From assembly GCA_002269645.1 (NCBI GenBank), contig NIVC01002947.1, positions 2,565-66,564 on the forward strand: DNA of 64,000 nucleotides, given 5' to 3'. The first letter of the stretch is position 1; each line of letters starts with the position of its first letter. The notes beneath the pieces are model-generated. The model did no database searches and had not been told where the DNA came from. It saw only the letters and a program-made list of their open reading frames with translations. Shown here piece by piece: positions 29,191 through 53,171 of this stretch. The translations under genes and the position numbers were made by a program. This DNA comes from Macrostomum lignano (taxonomy: Eukaryota).

Positions 29191-36387
<7,197 letters not shown>

Positions 36388-40352: not shown

Positions 40353-40416
<64 letters not shown>

Positions 40417-40423
40417 GTGTCTT

Positions 40424-40470
<47 letters not shown>

Positions 40471-40473
40471 GCC

Positions 40474-40540
<67 letters not shown>

Positions 40541-42375: not shown

Positions 42376-42542
42376 AGAAAGCATTGGGAATTAAGCAAAC
42401 TCTAAACAATATCTAAAAAGTATAAAATTAAAACTAACAGAAGCATGATAAGAATAAAAATCAGCAGGATTACAAGACCATGGTATATTTACTGCATATC
42501 TACCCCAGCATAAAATATTCCAGTTAGGAAGGCCAGGCCAGC

Positions 42543-44681
42543 TCAGTTCAGGAACTGGTACTGGAACTGGTCTCCGAATTTCTCCTGCATTTTCCTTCGC
42601 CGTCTCGCCTCCTCGTCCTCGGCCGCCCGCCTCAGCGCGGCCTTGCTGGCCACCCGGGCTGCCAGGCGGCTCCTCGGCGTGTCCACCAGCGCCCGGATGT
42701 CCACCAGGCCGCCGGTGCCGTCCGCCGTTGCGCTGTCGGCAGTCCACTGCGGCTGCTTCTTCCTCTTGACGGCCGCTTTCTTCTTAGGCGACTGAGACTG
42801 CGACTGGCTGCCGGACGGCTCTGCAGCGGAAGCAGAAGTGGCAGCAGCGGCGGTCAGCTGCCCAGCCTCATCCCTGGGCAGGATGCGGCCATGGAACGGG
42901 CACTTCAGGCGGTCCATTCGGGCGCAGACGCCGCCGCCGGGCAGCGGGTGGCGGCAGGCCCAGCGCACCGGCTCCTCGGGCTTCGAGTACACCATGGTGC
43001 GCATCGTCAGGATGTGCCGACTGCCGCTGATCTCGAAGGCTTCGTCGCCGTCCAGCGGCCGGTAGCCGAACGAGTGGCCGCCGTCGTCCATCCTGTAGCC
43101 GATGGTGGCCGAGCTGAGCTCCGCGGCCGCGTCCTTCGCGCCCCAGTGCAGCAGGTCCAGGCCGAACGGCACCGTGGGAACAGCGCTGCTCTTCGTCGAC
43201 TCTGTCGCCGAAGCCGACGAAGCTGCTGCCATCGTAGTTGACGCTGAAGTCGAAGAGGCAGCCGGTCTTGAAGCTGCCGACGACGGCTTGCTGGCGCTGG
43301 CCGGAGCCTCCTCGGCCTCCGTCTCGAAGCCTTCCTTTTTTTCGACAGCCTCGAAGTCGGTCGTGGATTCGTCGTCGTCATCCGTCAGGTTGTCGCCATC
43401 GACATCGTCGCTGAGGTGCGGCTGTCGGTCTCCGGCTGGCTGCCGCAGGATCCTCAGACTGGCCGCCTGTCCGAGCAGCCGGTCGGCTCTGGCCAGCAGG
43501 TCGGCCAGCTGGGCTCGCAGCTGCTGGTCGCTGGAGGAGTCGCTGCCGTCCTGCAGGCCGCCGCAGCGATCGGCCAGGGCCAGCCAGCGGGCCAGCCGTG
43601 GCCGGAGCTTCTTGCGCAGCTGGCCGGAGCGAGTCGCCAGGGCTTCGACCAGCTCGGCGTTGTCCGGCGTCTCTCGGACAGTCGGACGGGCCAAGCGAAG
43701 TTGCAGCGTCGATGTAGAGGAGGCGGCGGAGGCGGCGGCGGCGGTGGCCGAGCAGCTGACGATGCCGTGCAGCCGGCGGCGCTCGTCCTCGGTGGCGCCG
43801 TCAAAATCGGCGTCGGTGTCGTCTTCGGCGTCGTCGATGCTGTCGGCGTCGCCGGTCACACGGCCGGAGGTGAGCGAGTTCACGTCGAATTCCTCCGGCC
43901 GGGGCACCAGCAGCTCCAGGCAGTTGGCAACGGTTGCTAGGCAGGCGTTGAGCTCGGCCTCCTCGTCTTGAAACTGCCGCCGCGCCTCGTCCAGCAGGTC
44001 GCGCTTTTTCTCAGCCAGCCGGCGCGCCTCCGCCTGGCGCTGCTCGGCCGCCGCGGCGAGGCGGGAGCGAACCTGCGACAGGCGCGACTGGGAGGGGGAG
44101 AATCTAATCTCACTCTGAGATATCGAATCTCTTTGTGGCCTGTGAAACATTTGATCTCGATGTGAGAAAGCCGTGGAAATCCGTAGAAATCGAATCTAAT
44201 CTCTGTTATTAAACATCAAATTTCTCTCTGTCAAACATCTAATCTCTCTGTTAGACATCAAATCTCCTTATTTGTTAGACATTTAATCTCTCCGTGAGAA
44301 GCATTTTAATTCGCAATTTCTGATAAAAAATGCATTCATGAAGATCGGATTCTCTGATAGAGAAGTCAGCTGACTTGGTGAAAAACCGAACCCCCCACAG
44401 TCATGTTCAGAAACAGATTCAATCACTAAGCCCATTGAAGTCACGAAGGGTCAATTGATGCTCACCGCGTGCGCTTGAGAAAGAAATCTGAAAGCGAACA
44501 GCAGCTTGGGCTGCTCAGCGCTGAACTGCTCATGCCAGTCGATGAAGGCTTCCAGGGCGATGTCGCCCAGCTGACGGAACACTGACACCGGCTTGGGTGG
44601 CGGCGAGCTCGCGTCATTGTCTGCGGGGTGGGATAGGATAGATAGATAGATAAATGAAGACGGACAGACAGACAGACAGGC

Positions 44682-44714
<33 letters not shown>

Positions 44715-44737
44715 GGCAGACACTAAGACAGACAGGC

Positions 44738-44790
<53 letters not shown>

Positions 44791-44806
44791 TACAGGCAGA
44801 CAGACC

Positions 44807-44842
<36 letters not shown>

Positions 44843-45269
44843 GGCAGACAGACAGGCAGACAGACAGACAGGCAGACAGACAGACAGGCAGACAGGCAGA
44901 CAGGCAGACAGACAGACACAGGCAGTTAAAAAACCCACCAGTGAGCACGGAGGCCACCAGTCTTTCGAACCTGTCCAGCACCAGTTCCCGGAAGCGGCGC
45001 GACCTTCTAAACAGCAGGTCGACAATCTGGAAGGCGGACAGGCGCACCTGAGCATGGTCCTGGGCCAGGCGGTGGCACAGCAGGCTGTGCGCCAGGTCCA
45101 CCAGCTGCTGGTCGGAGCGGCAGAGCCGCTTCAGCTCGGCGCTGTCCGCCGGGTCGAGGCTGGGCCGGCCGCTGCGCGTGAGCCGCTCGATGCAGCCGTG
45201 CAGGCGGTCCCGGGGGTCGGCGGCGGTGGCTGCGCCTGGACGACCGCGGCGACCCCGGGAGGCGTCCAT
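42543..45269 (-). CDS. UVSSA: UV-stimulated scaffold protein A (transcription-coupled NER), ~676 aa
   Basis: Exons 45269-44939, 44620-44466 and 44087-42543; an alternative in-frame acceptor gives a start at 44072. VHS-like N-terminus ([14 protein letters not shown]...ELKRLCR...[20 protein letters not shown]), CLELLVP, zinc-finger [31 protein letters not shown], and C-terminus [13 protein letters not shown]. Confidence 0.93.
44660..44920. repeat. (CAGA)n microsatellite in UVSSA intron 1
   Basis: About 65 units with CAGG variants. Confidence 0.96.
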
Positions 45270-45915: not shown

Positions 45916-46064
45916 GGCACTCGGCGACGTGAGAATCCAAGAAATATAAGACAGAAAACAGCTGACAGGTGGGTATCAAACAGAAATGTTTACTTCCTAC
46001 CGCACTAGCAATAATCTACAGAAGCGGACGCGCACAGATCAAAAGTCAAATGCCGCTATGACAA

Positions 46065-46958
46065 TCAAGCAAAAGACTTGTAGCAGAAGAATGAGTGCAA
46101 ATACTCCAGCAGCCGGTCAATATTGTGGCCAGTCTTGACCGAGATGGTCAGCACAGGGCCAGGCAGACTGTTTGCTTCTTGAAGCAGCAATTTCAGATTG
46201 TCCTCCGAGTAGCTGAGGTCGGCCTTGTTGGCAGCGATGAGTTTGACAGACCGGGACATGCCGGCGGAGAAGTGGTCCAGCTCGTCGCACAGGGTCTCCA
46301 CCTGGCCCAGGGGGTCCTGGGCGCCCAGGTCAATCACGCAGATCAGGCAGGGGCAGCGGGCGATGTGGCTGCAGGTTGCGGTGGGGATTGGAAAAGTACT
46401 TATGCAGCAGCCAAGGATGCCGGAGAATCACGCGGGCAACTCGTGGGCATTATAAAAATCCTCGAAAATAGCGAGAAAACCTGCGCAAAATTTATAAACT
46501 CGAAACTCCACAAACTCGAATCTCCACAAACTCGAATCTCCACAAACTCGAATCTGCACAAACTCGAAACTCCACAACTCGAATCTCCACAAACTCTAAT
46601 CTCCACAAACTCGAAACTCCACAAACTCGAATCTCCACAAACTCGAAAATTCACATCGCTAAAAAGTAACTCCCGCCATTACTAAAAACATCACAATTAG
46701 GAAGACGTGACATTTCGAGTTTATAAAAGCGACCTGGCTTACTTGCTAACCAACTGCAAACTGCAGCCTTACCGCAGAAAGTCGTGGCCCAGGCCCTGGT
46801 TGTCGTGCGCCCCCTCGATCAGGCCGGGGATGTCCGCCACGCTGACGTCCAGACTGGGGAACTTCACCACGCCAACGTGAGGCTGCAGAGTGGTGAAGGG
46901 CTGGGGTGACACCCGCGGCCGCGCCCTGCTCAGGGCCCTGAGCAGGGAGGACTTGCCA

Positions 46959-46990
<32 letters not shown>

Positions 46991-48149
46991 CAGCACGCGG
47001 AGCCGTAGCGACAGCGGCCTGCACTCGCCTTTGGCTCCGTACTCGGCCAGCTGCGGCGCTCGATTGCTGTTGCTAAGGAAGAATGCGTTGCCCTTGCCGC
47101 CGGCGCCGCCCCTGGCCGCGATGTACAGCTGGGGTTTGATGGGGTGGCTGCGATGTACAGCTGGGGTTTGAGGGGGTGGCCGCGATGTACAGCTGGGGTT
47201 TGAGGGGGTGGCTGCGATGTACAGCTGGGGTTTGAGGGGTGGCCGCGATGTACAGCTGGGGTTTGAGGGGGTGGCCGCGATGTACAGCTGGGGTTTGAGG
47301 GGGTGGCTGCGATGTACAGCTGGGGTTTGAGGGGGTGGCTGCGATGTACAGCTGGGGTTTGAGGGGGTGGCCGCGATGTACAGCTGGGGTTTGAGGGGGT
47401 GGCTGCGATGTACAGCTGGGGTTTGAGGGGGTGGCCGCGATGTACAGCTGGGGTTTGAGGGGGTGGCTGCGATGTACAGCTGGGGTTTGAGGGGGTGGCT
47501 GCGATGTACAGCTGAGGTTTGAGGGGGTGGCTGCGATGTACAGCTGGGGTTTGAGGGGGGTGGCTGCGATGTACAGTTTGGGTTTGAGGGGGGTGGCTGC
47601 GATAAAAAAGTGCCCCTCAGCCGCAAACCGCAAACAACTTACCTGGCCGTCCTCCTGCAGCTCGCACAGCAACTGGCCAGCCTCATCAAAAACCTGCGTG
47701 CCAGGCGGCACGTCCAGCATCCGGTGCTCGCCGTTCCGGCCGTGGCAGTTGGAGCCGCCGCCGCCGCGACCGGCCTCGGCGCGAACCTCCGGCGGGATGG
47801 CGCTGAGGTCGCGTACGGACTCGCTGCAGCGCAGCACCACGTGGCCGCCGTGGCCTCCGTCGCCGCCGCCGGGCCCGGCCAGGGGGTTGCAGAACAGCCT
47901 GTTGAACGACACCATGCCGTCGCCGCCGCGCCCGCCCGAACACTGCAGCTGGCGCGAGTCGGCGAATCCTCGAACGTCGGCATCGCCGGCCGCCCGTCGC
48001 TTTCGGTGCAGCGGGCGAGGCGGCGACGTCGCCGCGGACGACGACGAAGCGAGGCGTCGACCAGCAAGCGACGACGACGACGGCAGCGCTCTGCCGAGAG
48101 CCAACAGCGACTGCGCCGTTCGGAGAAAAGTTGGCTGCAATATCAGGCC
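46065..48149 (-). CDS. MTG2: Mitochondrial ribosome-associated GTPase 2 (Obg family, GTPBP5/ObgH1); start codon absent from the genomic exon
   Basis: Exons 48149-47643, 47128-46773 and 46368-46065; 1167 nt in frame. Obg fold FAD...GGRGGDG...[37 protein letters not shown]; G1 [10 protein letters not shown]2 FTTLQP, G3 [11 protein letters not shown]4 NKAD. N-terminal R/L/S/A-rich presequence. The Obg N-terminus matches MTG2 rather than GTPBP10. Confidence 0.9.
46495..46645. repeat. 16-bp tandem repeat CTCCACAAACTCGAAT in MTG2 intron 2
   Basis: About 9 copies. Confidence 0.88.
47113..47603. repeat. 32-bp minisatellite spanning the MTG2 intron1/exon2 junction
   Basis: About 15 units of 31-33 bp; the minus-strand unit is CCCCCTCAAACCCCAG|CTGTACATCGC(A/G)GCCA. 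Confidence 0.96.
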
Positions 48150-48164
48150 CTGATTAGTACTGAT

Positions 48165-48835
48165 GATTTCAAAACAAACCGGAAGCAAACAAAGACAAAC
48201 CGGAAGTCTAAGAAACACAAACCGGAAGCAAAAACACAAACAGGAAGAAAACAAAGACTCAAACCAGAAAAAAACACAAACAGGAAGAAAACAAAGACTC
48301 AAACCAGAAAAAACACAAACAGGAAGAAAACGAAGACTCAAACCAGAAAAAACACAAACAGGAAGAAAACGAAGACTCAAACCAGAAAAAAACACAAACA
48401 GGAAGAAAACAAAGACACAAACCGGAAGCAAAAACACTAACAGGAAGAAAACGAAGACTCAAACCAGAAAAAAACACAAACAGGAAGAAAACAAAGACAC
48501 AAACCGGAAGCAAAAACACAAACAGGAAGAAAACAAAGACAAAAACCGGAAGCAAAAACACAAACAGGAAGAAAACAAAGACAAAAACCGGAAGCAAAAA
48601 CACTAACAGGAAGAAAACAAAGACTCAAACCAGAAAAAAACACAAACAGGAAGAAAACAAAGACTCAAACCAGAAAAAAACACAAACAGGAAGAAAACAA
48701 AGACACAAACCGGAAGCAAAAACACAAACAGGAAGAAAACAAAGACACAAACCGGAAGCAAAAACACAAACAAGAAAGTAACAGACACAAATCTGAAGTC
48801 AAAAAGGACACAAACTGGAAGTTAAAACAAAGACT
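48165..48835. repeat. ~40-bp A-rich minisatellite (ACAAACAGGAAGAAAACAAAGAC...) in the TMEM70-MTG2 spacer
   Basis: Two alternating sub-variants (TCAAACCAGAAAAAAAC and ACAAACCGGAAGCAAAAAC); U-rich on the transcribed minus strand. Confidence 0.92.
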
Positions 48836-48972
48836 AAAAAATTATCAATTAAAAGCGACTGAAAGAAAGGAAGACAAAAAATTGACTGAAAATCAGACTT
48901 GCATTTGTATTTTATAGCTAAGCAATGGAGCAATGCTAATATTCTATAGCAATAAAGGAGGCGCAGAAATCG

Positions 48973-49560
48973 CTACTTGCTACTGCGGCCAGTAGTCTGT
49001 TGAAAAATTTTGGCCACAGAATCGAAGTCCAAGCTGGAGGCAGCGTCAACAAACAGTTTTGCACCGTTGCTGGGCACGCTTAAATTAGCAAACGGTATGC
49101 CAGTCTCTGTCAAGGCAACTTCGTCTGGCCGGAAATCGATAAACCGATTGCGCAACAACACAGTCTTGGTCACGGCTCGGTAGGCGGTGCCATCCGTGTT
49201 GGCAAACAGCCAGAACACGTAGGAAGATGTGAACAGGTGCAGCAGCAGTGGGGTGGCCAGGGAGAACAGGCCCAGACCTCCAATGAGCACAGCATCCACC
49301 GCTCCGCCCCTGCCAGCCATGATAACAAAGGCCTGGCCGCACAGCCCAGCACTGCTTGTGGCCAGCGAGAAAGCTTTCACGCCTCGAACCATCGCATTCT
49401 TGGGGCCCCGGTAAACTAAACGATAGTTGGAGCCGGCAAGCTGCTCTTCTGCTTGGCTTGCCTGGCACAGGGACCTCTGGCTAGATTGACAGCTGGGTGG
49501 TAAACTCAAAAAGTTTGAATGGGTAGAAATTCTGATGATGGCTCTTGATGCAGACAGCAT
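48973..49560 (-). CDS. TMEM70: Transmembrane protein 70, mitochondrial (ATP synthase assembly factor), 195 aa, single exon
   Basis: Presequence MLSASRAIIRISTHS, then RLVYRGP..AMVRGVKAFSLATSSAGL, two hydrophobic segments, TPLLLHLFTSSYVFWL and YRAVTKTVLLRN. This matches the remembered TMEM70 pattern (LIYTG...GVKCFSYSTS...TPVLLHFITKGYV). Confidence 0.85.
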   Translation of the reverse strand: MLSASRAIIRISTHSNFLSLPPSCQSSQRSLCQASQAEEQLAGSNYRLVYRGPKNAMVRGVKAFSLATSSAGLCGQAFVIMAGRGGAVDAVLIGGLGLFSLATPLLLHLFTSSYVFWLFANTDGTAYRAVTKTVLLRNRFIDFRPDEVALTETGIPFANLSVPSNGAKLFVDAASSLDFDSVAKIFQQTTGRSSK

Positions 49561-51387
49561 TGCAGAAGCAATGAAGCTGAAAGTAGTCAGAAATAAAACT
49601 AAGTCGAATGGACAGTGAAATTTTAGACTTTGTGCATATTATGCATCCATGATTTTTATACAATCTATAAGGAATAATGTAAAATGATTGAATGAGGTTC
49701 GAAACATCAACTGTGGTGATGATGAAGATTTAATATGAAATATTACTGCACAAGAAAACTACTTAACCCTCTCGATTTTAAACTGCCAAATAAGTTTTAT
49801 TCATTTTTTGGCTAAAATTAATTAGTTGATATTCTCCCTAAATCTACTTATAAATCATTGTTAACTGTCACTACTCAATTTTTTTTTATTTTGCCTTTAA
49901 AATTAACAAAACAACAAAAAAGATCTCTTTTATTGAATGCAGAGTTTTATTTTCATAGGATTTCATACAGGAAAGATATAATCATTCTAGTCTGATTATC
50001 AAGTCCATGGAGAGAACTCAGCTTTATATCTTAAGTCAAAAGCAAGCATTTGGTATGGAATAAGCAAGTGCTAGCATAGTAATGGATCCAAATATTTGGA
50101 TTTGAAATCAAAATGCATAAAATGTCTAACTTTTTTAGACATTTGAATGTTTTGAATTTAAAAATATTTCCAAATATCTGAAAATGTGCTTCTAAATATG
50201 AAAAAATTCAAGAAACCAAAAAAATGTAAAAATTAAAGAATAAAACTTTTGAAAGAAGACAGTACATTAAAAATTAAAATACTAAGTTTTATATTTTATT
50301 GTTCATTTTTACAATTGACAGTTTTTGCAATGGCATATATAGTTATAGTTATCAAAAATGTTATTAAACTTTGGGACCTTTTAAGGCATTAAGCCTGAAG
50401 TTGAAAAGTTTTTTAGGTAATCATTTTTAAGTGTAATCATAACTTAGCTTTTCAAAATGCAAATGCATAGACTATACAATATATATTTATGCATTGCATT
50501 ATACATGTATTGTACTTTGAAATTAATTATCTGGATTCATCATTCATTTATGTGAGAGAGTTTACAAGAACAATTCTTAGCACAAATATAGCCATGAACA
50601 TAGTACATAATAGAATACAATATAATATAATACATAATACAATAATATATATATAGGCCAAAAGGCCTAAAATATGCAGAGGGGCCTAACATAGGCCTAG
50701 TAAACAAAGTTACCATTATTTTAAAGTGCTAGGCCTAAAATTGAGAGTTGCAATTAATAGTGATCACATTTAGGCCCTAAAGGTTCACTGATTCAATAAT
50801 TGGCTAATTGATGAAGTGGGTTGAGGGCATTCCATCTTATATACTAAATCTGAAAATGTTTGTAACTTTGTTTATAAGTTTCGCATCTCCTCTTGAACCA
50901 CTTGGTAGATTTTCGTCAAATTTGTTTCATTCGATGTGGAATTCTACTGGGCCCATGTGGTCTAATTTTCATTTTGATGTTGTAGTGTGAAGCCTCTGAA
51001 ATTGGAGAAATACTGTACTTCGCCTATCTAATTAGTGTATTTTTCTCGCAGTCAGAGTTAAATTTTCAATTTTATATCTATGGTGGTCCGTGAAGTTGAC
51101 TACGCGGCCGCAGCATCAGCAGCAGCAGCAGCGGCGGCTCGAGTCTAAATAAAGTCTTTCAATATATAAAGCTAATTATATAGTGTATTTTTCTCGCATT
51201 GATTTTATAACCTTGAAGTTCTTTAAGGTGAGTTCAACCGGTGAGTTCAACCGTGAGTCTGTTCAACTTCGATTCATTCATATTCGTGCTGGATTGGAGT
51301 GATTTGTCTGATCTTCTGTTTGTTTGTTTGTCGGCCTGAACCGGTTGACCAGTCTCAACAATTTCATGTGAATGTGTCTCTTAGTTT

Positions 51388-51747
51388 TTGATACCTGGGC
51401 GATTAATCATTAAGGAATTGCGAAACAATATCTTACAATGTCAAATTGCTGCTGGTCAATTCAAAGGCGAAACAGTTTTGTTGCCGCGCGTACCATTGAT
51501 ACCAAGTAATTTGGATCTACCTGTTAAGTTCAGAAGGCTACAATTTCCTCTACGACCCTGTTTCTGCATGACTATTCATAAAGCACAAGGCCAATCCCTT
51601 GACGTAGTTGGAATTGACCTTGCAGGTAGCTGTTTTGTGCATGGACAGCTCTACACTGCACTTTCCAGAGCAAAAAATGTTTGTAATGTTTGAGTTCGAA
51701 TGTGCGGCAAAAGAACCAAAAATATCGTTTACCCAGAAGTTTTTTGA
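51388..51747 (+). pseudogene. Helitron RepHel PIF1-like helicase C-terminal fragment
   Basis: RLIIKELRNN...GETVLLPRVPLIP...FRRLQFPLRPCFCMTIHKAQGQSLDVVGIDL...CFVHGQLYTALSR (SF1B motifs V/VI). An in-frame TGA at 51691 is followed by KRTKNIVYPEVF*, the typical Helitron helicase end. Confidence 0.88.
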
Positions 51748-52184
51748 ATTGGACGTCTTTATTATCTATTAATAATTTTTTATAATTCAATTTAAAAAAA
51801 ATATGTTGCTATTTTACTATGAGCCACAATTAAATATTGAAAGTGCATGCTGTCACGCAAAACGTCTATGAGAAAATGTGTGTCCTGAAACTGTATTTTT
51901 CGCGGAATGCATAAGCTTGAGATGCATTTCTAGCTTAAGATGAATTTCTAGCTGCAAGTAGTAAATTCCATTAAATTTGTCTTCATCGTTATGTTAAAAG
52001 ATGGCAAGCAAGCTAAGCAAGTTAACGATTTCTTCTCTCTCTGTCGGTCCCATGCACGGCGTAGTCTCCGGAATTACTTTGTTAAGAACTGAGGTAAGCT
52101 TCCATAATTTGCTATTTTGCTTCATATATATACTTTTTTTAAAAAATCAATCCACTTAAACAACATCGTTTTTTACTAAACCAG

Positions 52185-53171
52185 ATTAGGGATGGCAAGA
52201 AGAACAAATGGTTTTCGTTTTTGATGTCAGATGAGTCAGGTGAAATCAGAGTGGCAGTTTTTGGCGATGAGTTGCAAGAACACTGGAGCATTTGCGAAAA
52301 CAGGCAAACAATCTCCATCTGTGAAGGAATGGTAAAGTGTGCTAATCCAAAATTCAACTGAACAAGCAATATGCATGAAGTTACTCTGTCAATCAATGAG
52401 GATAACAAGGACTCTCTCCGCCAGTGTAGCGATGCGATAGTTCCCATAAATGGTCCGTTCAAAGCGCTCTCCGAACTACCAAGAATTGGAGTGAATGGGT
52501 AAGTCCATCCTCAAAATGTAGAATAAACAGGAAGATATATATACTTCACACATTTTCATTCTTCATATTTTCAGTTTTGTTGATGTTCTCGGTGTCATTG
52601 TCAAAGTGGAACAACCCGTTGACGTCAACACGCGTTCCGGAAAGTTGGTGCAGCTCGCAAAAGTCTGCATCGTAGACAAATCTGGTTTTCAGACTTTTTG
52701 CAACTTCTGGGACGCCTCTGCTACCCAGGTACATTTGTGGAGACCAGGAGACATAGTTGCTATTAGAAAAGCCAAGATTCAAGAGTACGCCGGCTCGCTT
52801 TGTCTTGGTTGCTCATCATCAACTATTTCGTATTCGCCTGTTCATGACACTGCTCAAGATCTGAAAACCTGGTACGAAGAGTCTGAGAGCAGCACCCAAT
52901 TTCTACCGCTAGCTAATAGCTCAACTATGGACATTACTGACACCGCAGCTGACGACGTGCTTGCATTTGAATTCCTAGCATCGATGCAGCCGCATATCGA
53001 CCGGATGCGTCGAGTTGTTATCCGCTGTGGAGCGCAACGGGTACTTATATATACATATGTATATTAACGGGTATGATTTGACTTTTTAATAGATTGTACT
53101 TGAAGAACACATTAATACACTTTCCATTTTAGTACGTCGGCCTGTTGAACATTTGTAACGAATTCCTATGA
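52185..53171 (+). pseudogene. RPA70-like OB-fold ssDNA-binding protein pseudogene, copy 1
   Basis: Exons ~52185-52498, 52575-53040 and 53133-53171 with GT-AG introns. MSDESGEIRVAVFG...GMVKCANPKFN (DBD-A-like) and FVDVLGVIVKV...IVDKSG...FW...IVAIRKAKIQEYAG.LCLGCSSSTI...DLKTWY (DBD-B-like). In-frame TGA at 52359. Confidence 0.82.

What the first reader, a model, noticed from the sequence alone, without database searches (positions are those of the whole stretch)
47913..48160. MTG2 has no genomic start codon: its mitochondrial presequence may be initiated by the AUG at the end of the flatworm spliced leader
The reading frame upstream of the Obg fold has no ATG back to the TAG at 48440. The first in-frame ATG (47915) is residue 79, inside the conserved FAD...GGRGGDG motif, and starting there would delete the targeting peptide. 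A clean acceptor, ACTAATCAG| (branch-like CTAAT), sits exactly in phase 0 at 48149. Adding AUG yields [37 protein letters not shown]..., with 55 residues free of D/E and rich in R/L/S/A: a canonical presequence. Flatworm SLs end in a conserved AUG that can serve as initiator Met (shown in Schistosoma). Mitochondrial import of this protein would then depend on trans-splicing. The alternative is a 6-nt ATGCAA micro-exon at 48904-48899 with a weak GTCTGA donor inside the TMEM70 3' region.
Basis: partly seen in the sequence, partly recalled or inferred. Interest (0 to 1): 0.8.

Follow-up and report, generated by a model that had tools for sequence, protein, structure and literature searches.

The report
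MTG2 gene lacking its own start codon
A mitochondrial ribosome-assembly GTPase gene (MTG2) in the flatworm Macrostomum lignano has no usable genomic start codon and most likely borrows the AUG at the end of the trans-spliced leader; this mechanism is already documented in other flatworms and there is no RNA evidence for it at this locus.

Summary
The window is Macrostomum lignano: its PDE1 ORF is 99% identical to a UniRef M. lignano protein. A three-exon MTG2/Obg gene lies on the minus strand at 48149/48134..46065. Its first in-frame ATG (47915) sits inside the Obg fold, downstream of five invariant residues. The minus strand has no ATG in any frame from 48903 to 47984, and the first ATG after that (47983) is out of frame. 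One detail is wrong: the upstream in-frame stop is TGA at 48461-48459, not TAG at 48440.

The published M. lignano spliced leader (SL) ends in ATG. Three AG acceptors at the AT-rich/GC-rich boundary are in phase 0: 48149, 48134 and 48110. It matches the published SL-acceptor motif [T/C]TNCAG, and it lies 19 nt from the CTAAT branch-like site, against about 4 nt for 48149. Either acceptor gives a presequence-like N-terminus with no acidic residue for more than 50 positions.

The gene lies about 830 nt (about 170 nt after removing repeats) downstream of a same-strand TMEM70-family gene, with no consensus cis donor upstream. That matches published M. lignano operon geometry.

No transcript data could be reached, so trans-splicing here is inferred. 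Initiation at the SL AUG is already known in Schistosoma and Echinococcus, so this is a new member of a known kind. The main rival is loss of the start codon by an ATG-to-ATA change at 48143.

The parts
48973..49560 (-). Upstream same-strand gene: a TMEM70/TMEM186/TMEM223-family ORF of 195 aa with its own ATG at 49560. It is the probable first cistron of an operon-like chain.
   Evidence: Pfam PF06979 at 3.3e-15. ORF. The 5' flank 49600-52500 is AT-rich (22-40% GC) with no exon-like GC islands.
48174..48834 (-). 42-nt-period tandem repeat, T/G-rich on the transcribed strand. It fills the TMEM70-to-MTG2 spacer and is the probable intercistronic outron. It contains no ATG.
   Evidence: Tandem Repeats Finder: period 42, 16 copies, 88% matches. 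ATG census. Repeat-inflated operon spacers are described for M. lignano in PMC8629364.
48899..48904 (-). Judged unlikely.
   Evidence: The donor GTCTGA does not match the M. lignano consensus GT[G/A]AG. No GT[AG]AG occurs anywhere on this strand from 50300 to 48150.
48153..48159 (-). TACTAAT branch-point-like element, with the putative branch A at 48154.
   Evidence: Read directly. The A is 4 nt from the AG at 48151-48150 and 19 nt from the AG at 48136-48135.
48150..48151 (-). Exon start 48149, phase 0. SL-AUG would give [12 protein letters not shown]...
   Evidence: Does not match [T/C]TNCAG.
48135..48136 (-). AG of the favoured acceptor (TTGCAG|CCA). Exon start 48134, phase 0. SL-AUG would give [16 protein letters not shown]...
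   Evidence: it is the only nearby AG matching the published SL-acceptor motif [T/C]TNCAG. The 8-mer TGCAGCCA is the same as at the intron-2 acceptor of this gene.
48141..48143 (-). In-frame ATA codon, a possible relic of an ancestral ATG (MLQPTFLRT...). This is the basis of the start-loss rival.
   Evidence: An inference; not testable here.
47976..48134 (-). Presequence-like coding stretch: no D/E, rich in R, S, A and L.
   Evidence: features; orthologues carry 45-75 residues before the Obg fold. Codon statistics are uninformative here.
47981..47983 (-). First genomic ATG a scanning ribosome would meet. It is out of frame (+1), so an mRNA without the SL AUG would be misread.
47913..47915 (-). 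First in-frame genomic ATG. It is an internal Met of the Obg fold (GGRGGDG-M), not a start.
   Evidence: The Pfam GTP1_OBG match begins 19-20 residues upstream of it.
47643..48134 (-). Donor CAG|gtaagt.
   Evidence: In the Obg part, frame-0 codon log-likelihood ratio is +57 bits and third-position GC is 0.90.
47129..47642 (-). Intron 1, almost entirely a 32-bp tandem repeat whose unit copies the acceptor plus the first ~15 nt of exon 2.
   Evidence: Tandem Repeats Finder 47113-47603, 15.3 copies, 96% matches. Sequence.
46773..47128 (-). MTG2 exon 2: end of the Obg fold, G1 motif GYPNAGKS and G3 motif DIPG.
   Evidence: The junction DGQ|[11 protein letters not shown] aligns with the orthologues.
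46065..46368 (-). MTG2 exon 3: G4 motif NKAD, C-terminus and TGA stop.
45989..45994 (-). AGTAAA, a candidate poly(A) signal about 70 nt after the MTG2 stop.
   Evidence: The same hexamer follows the UVSSA stop at 42493.

Best explanation
MTG2 is most likely the second gene of an operon-like transcription unit: TMEM70-family gene, then MTG2, then UVSSA, then Nup85, all on the minus strand.

Proposed sequence of events:
1. The T/G-rich tandem repeat between the TMEM70-family gene and MTG2 is removed as an outron.
2. The 35-nt M. lignano spliced leader (SL) is trans-spliced onto an in-phase AG acceptor at the 5' edge of the GC-rich exon. The best candidate is TTGCAG|CCA, exon start 48134.
3. The SL's 3'-terminal AUG then becomes codon 1 of the protein.
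4. The product is [32 protein letters not shown]... (or M-GLILQPTF...). It has a basic, hydroxylated N-terminal extension with no acidic residue for over 50 positions, comparable in length to the N-terminal extensions of orthologous MTG2 proteins.
5. Without the SL, the mRNA has no in-frame AUG ahead of the conserved Obg residues, and its first AUG (47983) is out of frame.

Shown here: the species, the gene model, the lack of a genomic start, the phase of the acceptors, the spacing, and the SL sequence (from the literature).
Inferred: that this mRNA is trans-spliced, which acceptor is used, that the SL AUG is the start used in vivo, and that the N-terminus acts as a mitochondrial import signal.
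For: - Species is M. lignano: 99% identity of the PDE1 ORF to A0A1I8FXM7.
- The M. lignano SL ends in ATG. About 30% of genes are trans-spliced, with enrichment among conserved genes. The SL-acceptor motif is [T/C]TNCAG. Operon spacers are inflated by repeats, with a repeat-adjusted mode of about 100 bp and a 1 kb threshold (PMC8629364). [quoted passage not shown]
- No in-frame ATG for 104 codons upstream. No ATG in any frame from 48903 to 47984. The first downstream ATG is out of frame.
- Three consecutive phase-0 AGs (48149, 48134, 48110) sit at the AT-to-GC composition step.
- No GT[AG]AG donor on this strand in the 2.15 kb upstream.
- The spacer from the TMEM70-family stop to the acceptor is about 825-838 nt. 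Of this, 661 nt is tandem repeat, leaving about 165-177 nt adjusted. The next two spacers are about 252 and 227 nt adjusted.
- Invariant Obg residues lie upstream of Met79, and orthologues have 45-75 residues before the fold, against 55-60 here.
- The N-terminus has presequence-like composition.
- Precedent: use of the SL AUG as initiator is documented in S. mansoni, S. japonicum and E. granulosus.
Against: - No transcript, EST or SL-read evidence for this locus could be reached. The protein database holds no M. lignano MTG2 at all (best hit 45% identity), and the exact look-ups and a metagenome scan found nothing.
- Codon-usage scoring does not favour frame 0 in the presequence region. Its coding status rests on continuity with the conserved [17 protein letters not shown] block and on N-terminal length.
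- Recalled Kozak rules: the SL gives a weak initiation context (U at -3), and with 48134 the +4 base is C.
- For the three neighbouring genes, the SL AUG would be out of frame at their likely acceptors. The SL AUG must therefore often be bypassed.
- An ATA at 48143 could be a recently mutated ATG.
Confidence: 0.7

Rival explanations
1. Start-codon loss in this copy. The in-frame ATA at 48143-48141 was an ATG (giving [11 protein letters not shown]...), and this homeologue or haplotype of the neopolyploid genome carries a G-to-A start-loss mutation, or less probably an assembly error. The copy would then be defective, or would rely on weak near-cognate initiation. This partly overlaps with the main explanation, because an in-frame SL AUG would make such a loss neutral.
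For: - ATA lies exactly where an ATG would give a typical presequence start, 2 codons after 48149.
- M. lignano carries many duplicated gene copies: BUSCO duplication is 79% and a large chromosome is duplicated.
- No M. lignano MTG2 protein is present in the database for comparison.
Against: - The rest of the gene is intact over three exons, with all G motifs and invariant Obg residues present.
- With the favoured acceptor at 48134, the ATA lies in the outron and is irrelevant.
- Recalled, not tested: substitution errors are uncommon in polished long-read assemblies.
- Nothing positively indicates that an ATG ever stood here.
Confidence: 0.1
2. Near-cognate (non-AUG) initiation on an mRNA that does not use the SL AUG, for example at CTG 48146, ATA 48143, TTG 48140 or CTG 48107.
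For: Several in-frame near-cognate codons cluster at the 5' end of the exon. They would yield the same presequence.
Against: - None has a strong context.
- Recalled: near-cognate starts are generally inefficient.
- A ready-made AUG is supplied if the mRNA is trans-spliced, and the gene's position favours trans-splicing.
Confidence: 0.06
3. A cis-spliced upstream exon supplies the ATG. This would be either the 6-nt ATGCAA at 48904-48899 (donor GTCTGA) or an exon beyond the TMEM70-family gene.
For: ATGCAA spliced to 48149 or 48134 would be in frame.
Against: - The donor GTCTGA departs from the GT[G/A]AG consensus.
- No consensus donor occurs in the 2.15 kb upstream.
- The candidate lies in the 3' region of the TMEM70-family gene, next to its TATAAA/AATACA hexamers.
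- The 3 kb beyond the TMEM70-family gene is 22-40% GC with no exon-like islands.
Confidence: 0.04
4. Translation starts at the genomic Met at 47915 and gives an N-terminally truncated protein with no targeting sequence.
For: It is the only in-frame genomic ATG.
Against: - It would delete five invariant Obg-fold residues and the start of the Pfam GTP1_OBG match.
- An out-of-frame ATG (47983) precedes it.
- Nematode orthologues have the same internal GGDGMVSF Met.
Confidence: 0.02

Closest known systems
[quoted passage not shown] 2006, J Biol Chem 281:733, as cited in PMC9851317, PMC12582326 and PMC3510090; called 'slORFs' in PMC9851317)
   Same: - The SL ends in AUG.
- The acceptor is in phase with the main ORF.
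- No genomic AUG would give an N-terminus matching conserved orthologues.
- Reported for more than 40 S. mansoni cDNAs, 35 S. japonicum genes and many E. granulosus clusters, including ones for mitochondrial proteins such as a NADH-ubiquinone oxidoreductase subunit and COX6B.
   Different: - The case here is in a free-living macrostomid.
- I found no paper among those read that examines SL-AUG initiation gene by gene in M. lignano.
- No cDNA evidence is available for this locus.
Macrostomum lignano SL trans-splicing and operons (Ustyantsev & Berezikov 2021, PMC8629364; Wudarski et al. 2017, PMC5730564)
   Same: - Same-strand genes are separated by repeat-filled spacers whose repeat-adjusted length is well under 1 kb.
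- The acceptor matches [T/C]TNCAG.
- The downstream gene is conserved between flatworm and human.
   Different: Membership of these four genes in an annotated operon, and SL reads at MTG2, could not be checked here.
Echinococcus granulosus thioredoxin glutathione reductase: trans-spliced mRNAs encoding mitochondrial and cytosolic variants (Agorio et al. 2003, cited in PMC3510090 and PMC2873472)
   Same: Trans-splicing of a flatworm gene determines whether the product carries a mitochondrial leader peptide.
   Different: There, two alternative trans-spliced mRNAs give two localisations. Here a single product is expected, and the SL would only supply the Met.
Human MTG2/GTPBP5 (ObgH1), late assembly factor of the mitochondrial large ribosomal subunit (PDB 7ODT, 7OF5, 7OF7, 7O9K)
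   Same: Obg fold plus G domain. E-value 2.6e-85, with residues 25-376 aligned to 39-387 of the human chain. An N-terminal extension of similar length precedes the fold.
   Different: About 42-45% identity. The human gene has its own genomic start codon (recalled, not tested here).

Membership tests
SL-AUG-initiated flatworm mRNAs (slORFs) | The organism's spliced leader ends in AUG directly before the donor site. | tested here: met
   The window is assigned to M. lignano. The published 35-nt SL ends ...TTATTGCATG and is followed by GTAAG in the SL RNA gene (PMC8629364). The SL gene itself is not in the window.
SL-AUG-initiated flatworm mRNAs (slORFs) | The trans-splice acceptor is in phase 0 with the main ORF. 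| tested here: met
   AG acceptors with exon starts at 48149, 48134 and 48110 are all in phase 0 and open through to the exon-1 donor.
SL-AUG-initiated flatworm mRNAs (slORFs) | No genomic AUG can give an N-terminus that corresponds to conserved orthologues. | tested here: met
   No in-frame ATG for 104 codons upstream. The first in-frame ATG lies after invariant Obg residues. An out-of-frame ATG precedes it.
SL-AUG-initiated flatworm mRNAs (slORFs) | The mature mRNA actually carries the SL at that acceptor. | not testable with these tools
   No M. lignano transcript or read data could be reached. Supplements searched for MTG2, GTPBP5, TMEM70 and UVSSA gave no hit.
SL-AUG-initiated flatworm mRNAs (slORFs) | Translation initiates at the SL AUG in vivo. 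| not testable with these tools
   This needs ribosome profiling, N-terminal proteomics or reporter assays.
MTG2 / ObgH1 (mitochondrial Obg GTPase) | N-terminal Obg fold followed by a G domain carrying G1, G3 and G4 motifs. | tested here: met
   PF01018 at 8.3e-45 (residues 60-210) and PF01926 at 6.1e-22. [12 protein letters not shown] and NKAD are present. The best hits in the Protein Data Bank search are human MTG2 chains (2.6e-85), far ahead of GTPBP10 (4e-41); a bacterial Obg (1udx) follows closely at 2.2e-83.
MTG2 / ObgH1 (mitochondrial Obg GTPase) | N-terminal mitochondrial targeting presequence. | tested here: inconclusive
   Only crude features were computed. In the first 40 residues there are 0 D/E, 4 R/K, 11-13 S/T and 14-15 A/L. 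The first acidic residue is at 52-57, and the extension length is like that of orthologues. No trained predictor (TargetP, MitoFates) was available.
M. lignano operon (as defined in PMC8629364) | Same-strand neighbours with a repeat-adjusted intergenic distance under 1 kb. | tested here: met
   About 165-177 nt (TMEM70-family to MTG2), 252 nt (MTG2 to UVSSA) and 227 nt (UVSSA to Nup85) after subtracting tandem repeats.
M. lignano operon (as defined in PMC8629364) | The downstream genes are SL trans-spliced. | not testable with these tools
   No SL-read data. YTNCAG-type or similar acceptors lie 10-50 nt upstream of the ATGs of TMEM70, UVSSA and Nup85.

The most novel reading that the evidence does not exclude
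The TMEM70-family gene and MTG2 form a conserved 'mitochondrial biogenesis' operon in Macrostomum. Its downstream cistron has permanently given up its genomic start codon in all homeologues and sister species. Both synthesis and mitochondrial import of a mitoribosome assembly GTPase would then depend strictly on SL trans-splicing, and choice between the alternative in-phase acceptors (48149, 48134, 48110) would tune the presequence.
Probability: 0.2. Interest if true: 0.45.

Novelty: new member of a known kind. Interest (0 to 1): 0.3.

Why it matters
If correct, this is a clean example from a free-living model flatworm of an essential, conserved mitochondrial protein whose start codon is not in its gene.

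- Annotation. Gene finders that demand a genomic ATG, or pipelines that trim the SL together with its ATG, will truncate or drop such genes. No M. lignano MTG2 appears in the 5.8-billion-protein collection, although a neighbouring gene from the same window does. That absence is compatible with the problem but does not prove it.
- Experimental design. Transgene or knock-in designs for such genes in M. lignano need to allow for the missing start codon.
- Mechanism. It adds nothing new, because SL-AUG initiation has been known in flatworms since 2006.

Tried and rejected
- SL gene in the window: searched for the SL 3' half with up to 2 mismatches and found none. An Rfam scan of the whole window found nothing.
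- Direct transcript or protein evidence:
  - A homology search with the full MTG2 model found no M. lignano or Macrostomum relative; the best hit was 45% identity.
  - An exact look-up of the TMEM70-family ORF found no record.
  - The best homologue's contigs are Tara/JGI metatranscriptome contigs and are uninformative.
  - An exact 24-mer scan of metagenome contigs found nothing.
- Literature:
  - Supplements of two M. lignano transcriptome papers have no occurrence of MTG2, GTPBP5, TMEM70 or UVSSA.
  - PMC8629364 has no supplements held.
  - Cheng et al. 2006 and Wasik et al. 2015 are not held.
- Codon-usage log-likelihood, intended to show that the presequence is coding in frame 0, was uninformative. 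All three frames are open and GC is flat across codon positions.
- The bacterial promoter/terminator scan is irrelevant to a eukaryote.
- Rejected readings: Met79 as the start (it deletes invariant residues); the ATGCAA micro-exon (non-consensus donor, located in the neighbour's 3' region); acceptor 48159 (it would give AUG-UAC-UAA); acceptor 48257 inside the repeat (weak TTTGAG, and it would add 36 hydrophobic repeat-encoded residues).
Full report
**Organism and locus**

The window is from Macrostomum lignano or a near-identical line. A PDE1 catalytic-domain ORF at 30985-31920 (+) is 99% identical to UniRef A0A1I8FXM7 (M. lignano), and other M. lignano paralogues follow at 78-80%. Other ORFs are metazoan: fibrinogen-C, PDZ/LIM, Nup85, UVSSA, and a TMEM70-family protein.

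**Gene model**

An Obg-type GTPase gene lies on the minus strand.

| Feature | Coordinates | Note |
|---|---|---|
| Exon 1 | ends at 47643 | donor CAG\|gtaagt |
| Exon 2 | 47128-46773 | CCCCAG\|CTG ... CTGCG\|gtaagg |
| Exon 3 | 46368-46065 | CTGCAG\|CCA ... TGA |

The junctions restore the conserved DGQ|[14 protein letters not shown] and FLR|HIARC blocks. Pfam gives GTP1_OBG at 8.3e-45 and MMR_HSR1 at 6.1e-22. The best solved relative is human MTG2 in mitoribosome assembly intermediates (7ODT, 7OF5, 7OF7, 7O9K) at 2.6e-85, well ahead of GTPBP10 at 4e-41. The identification as MTG2 is sound.

**The observation**

- Counting back in frame from 48149, there is no ATG for 104 codons, up to TGA at 48461-48459.
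The TAG at 48439-48437 is in another frame.
- The whole minus strand from 49000 to 47900 holds only three ATGs: 48904 (frame 1), 47983 (frame 1) and 47915 (frame 0).
- The Met at 47915 is the residue after GGRGGDG. Five columns that are invariant in a 13-sequence alignment (D64, G73, G75, G76, G78) lie upstream of it, and two nematode orthologues have the same internal GGDGMVSF. It cannot be the start.
- A ribosome scanning an mRNA without an added AUG would first meet the out-of-frame ATG at 47983.
- Orthologues carry 45-75 residues ahead of the FVDxRRV block; this gene has 55-60 if it starts near 48149 or 48134.
- The N-terminus has no acidic residue for more than 50 positions and is rich in R, S, A and L. 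I could compute only crude features, not a trained targeting predictor.

One caution is needed. A codon-usage log-likelihood trained on confident exons in the window separates frames sharply in the Obg part of exon 1: +57 bits in frame 0, with third-position GC of 0.90. It does not separate them in 48134-47916, where GC is flat at 0.71-0.74 at all three codon positions and all frames are open. The coding status of the presequence therefore rests on two things: continuity with the conserved block starting near residue 58, and N-terminal length.

**Acceptors**

The composition steps from 30-40% GC (a tandem repeat) to 65-75% GC between 48160 and 48120. The AG dinucleotides in this zone are listed below.

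| Exon start | Context | Phase | Consequence with SL-AUG |
|---|---|---|---|
| 48159 | CATCAG\|TAC | 2 | AUG-UAC-UAA, non-productive |
| 48149 | AATCAG\|GGC | 0 | M-GLILQPTF... |
| 48134 | TTGCAG\|CCA | 0 | M-PTFLRTAQ... |
| 48110 | GCGCAG\|TCG | 0 | M-SLLALGR... |

The published motif enriched at M. lignano SL acceptors is [T/C]TNCAG (PMC8629364). Only 48134 matches it. That is 4 nt from the AG at 48151-48150 and 19 nt from the AG at 48136-48135. From general splicing knowledge (recalled, not tested), an AG that close to the branch point is normally skipped, and about 18-25 nt is typical. I therefore favour 48134, which gives [16 protein letters not shown].... The choice does not affect the main claim, because 48149 is also in phase.

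**Is trans-splicing likely here?**

- The M. lignano SL is a single 35-nt sequence, CGGTCTCTTACTGCGAAGACTCAATTTATTGCATG, followed by GTAAG in the SL RNA gene.
- About 30% of genes are trans-spliced, and 70% of trans-spliced genes are conserved with human.
- Operon spacers are inflated by repeats, with a repeat-adjusted mode near 100 bp and a working threshold of 1 kb.
- Here a TMEM70-family ORF (49560-48973, same strand) ends 825-838 nt upstream of the acceptor. Of this, 661 nt is a 42-nt-period tandem repeat (48174-48834), which leaves about 165-177 nt.
- The chain continues with UVSSA (ATG 45269) and Nup85 (ATG 41247). Their spacers are about 252 and 227 nt once tandem repeats are removed.
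- Upstream of the TMEM70-family gene lie about 3 kb of 22-40% GC with no exon-like islands.
- No GT[AG]AG donor occurs on this strand in the 2.15 kb upstream of the acceptor. The acceptor is therefore unpaired in cis, which is the condition reviewed in PMC8629364 as sufficient for SL trans-splicing.

**What could not be shown**

I found no RNA evidence. The 5.8-billion-protein collection has no M. lignano MTG2; the best hit is 45% identity. A metagenome scan was empty. Supplements of two M. lignano transcriptome papers do not list the gene. Trans-splicing of this mRNA, the acceptor used and initiation at the SL AUG are all inferences.

**Rivals**

1. The in-frame ATA at 48143 may be a mutated ATG (MLQPTFLRT...). 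That would be a start loss in one copy of a highly duplicated genome. It cannot be tested without the other copies, and it is compatible with the main explanation as its evolutionary route.
2. Near-cognate initiation at CTG 48146, TTG 48140 and similar codons.
3. A cis exon. The ATGCAA|gtctga at 48904-48899 has a non-consensus donor and lies among the neighbour's poly(A)-like hexamers.
4. Met79 as the start, rejected as described above.

**Comparison with what is known**

All reported flatworm SLs end in AUG (PMC12582326). According to PMC9851317, which cites Cheng et al. [quoted passage not shown] Some of these require it in order to match conserved orthologues, and its use is conserved for 10 of 15 orthologues of S. 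japonicum SL-AUG genes. Examples include mitochondrial proteins. Trans-splicing that determines mitochondrial versus cytosolic variants is known for E. granulosus TGR. For Macrostomum, the SL ATG has been noted as a likely start codon. In the papers I read, I found no gene-level analysis of SL-AUG use in M. lignano.

**Verdict**

This is a new member of a known kind, and its main value is as an annotation caveat. Interest 0.3.

Noticed in passing
window 1-22947: A 22-bp satellite (AAGCGTCATGTAAAAATCATAG) with about 1038 copies at 99% identity fills the first 23 kb of the window. Its composition is very uniform (GC 0.32, AT skew 0.33).
   Followed up: partly
window 49560-39522, minus strand: Four same-strand genes (TMEM70-family, MTG2, UVSSA, Nup85) are separated by 0.8-1.3 kb spacers that consist mostly of different tandem repeats (periods 42, 30 and 22 nt). 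The repeat-adjusted spacers are 165-250 nt, which fits published M. lignano operon geometry.
   Followed up: partly
window 47113-47603 (MTG2 intron 1): The intron is almost entirely a 32-bp tandem repeat (15.3 copies). Its unit reproduces the intron-1 acceptor plus the first ~15 nt of exon 2 (CCCCAG|CTGTACATCGC[A/G]GCC), giving about 15 decoy acceptors. Two reading frames stay open across the repeat.
   Followed up: no
window 49577-49560; 45321-45269; 41257-41247 (minus strand): The TMEM70-family gene, UVSSA and Nup85 each have a CAG acceptor (TTTCAG, TTCCAG/ATCAG, TCGCAG) 10-50 nt upstream of their genomic ATG. At these sites the SL AUG would be out of frame and would open an overlapping upstream ORF. 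If these genes are trans-spliced, the SL AUG must be bypassed on their mRNAs.
   Followed up: partly
window 45994 and 42493 (minus strand): AGTAAA hexamers lie about 70 and 50 nt after the MTG2 and UVSSA stop codons and are possible variant poly(A) signals. The TMEM70-family gene has TATAAA/AATACA at 48916/48911 instead.
   Followed up: no
window 44658-44918 and 40354-40540: Long tetranucleotide microsatellites, (AGAC)65 in UVSSA and (TGTC)47 in Nup85 as written on the plus strand, sit between the conserved-domain ORFs of these genes and read through as open frames (for example repeated 'CLSV').
   Followed up: no
MTG2 locus as a whole: No M. lignano MTG2 protein is present in the 5.8-billion-protein collection (best hit 45% identity), whereas PDE1 from the same window has a 99% UniRef match. 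The gene may have been missed or truncated by annotation pipelines because it lacks an ATG.
   Followed up: partly
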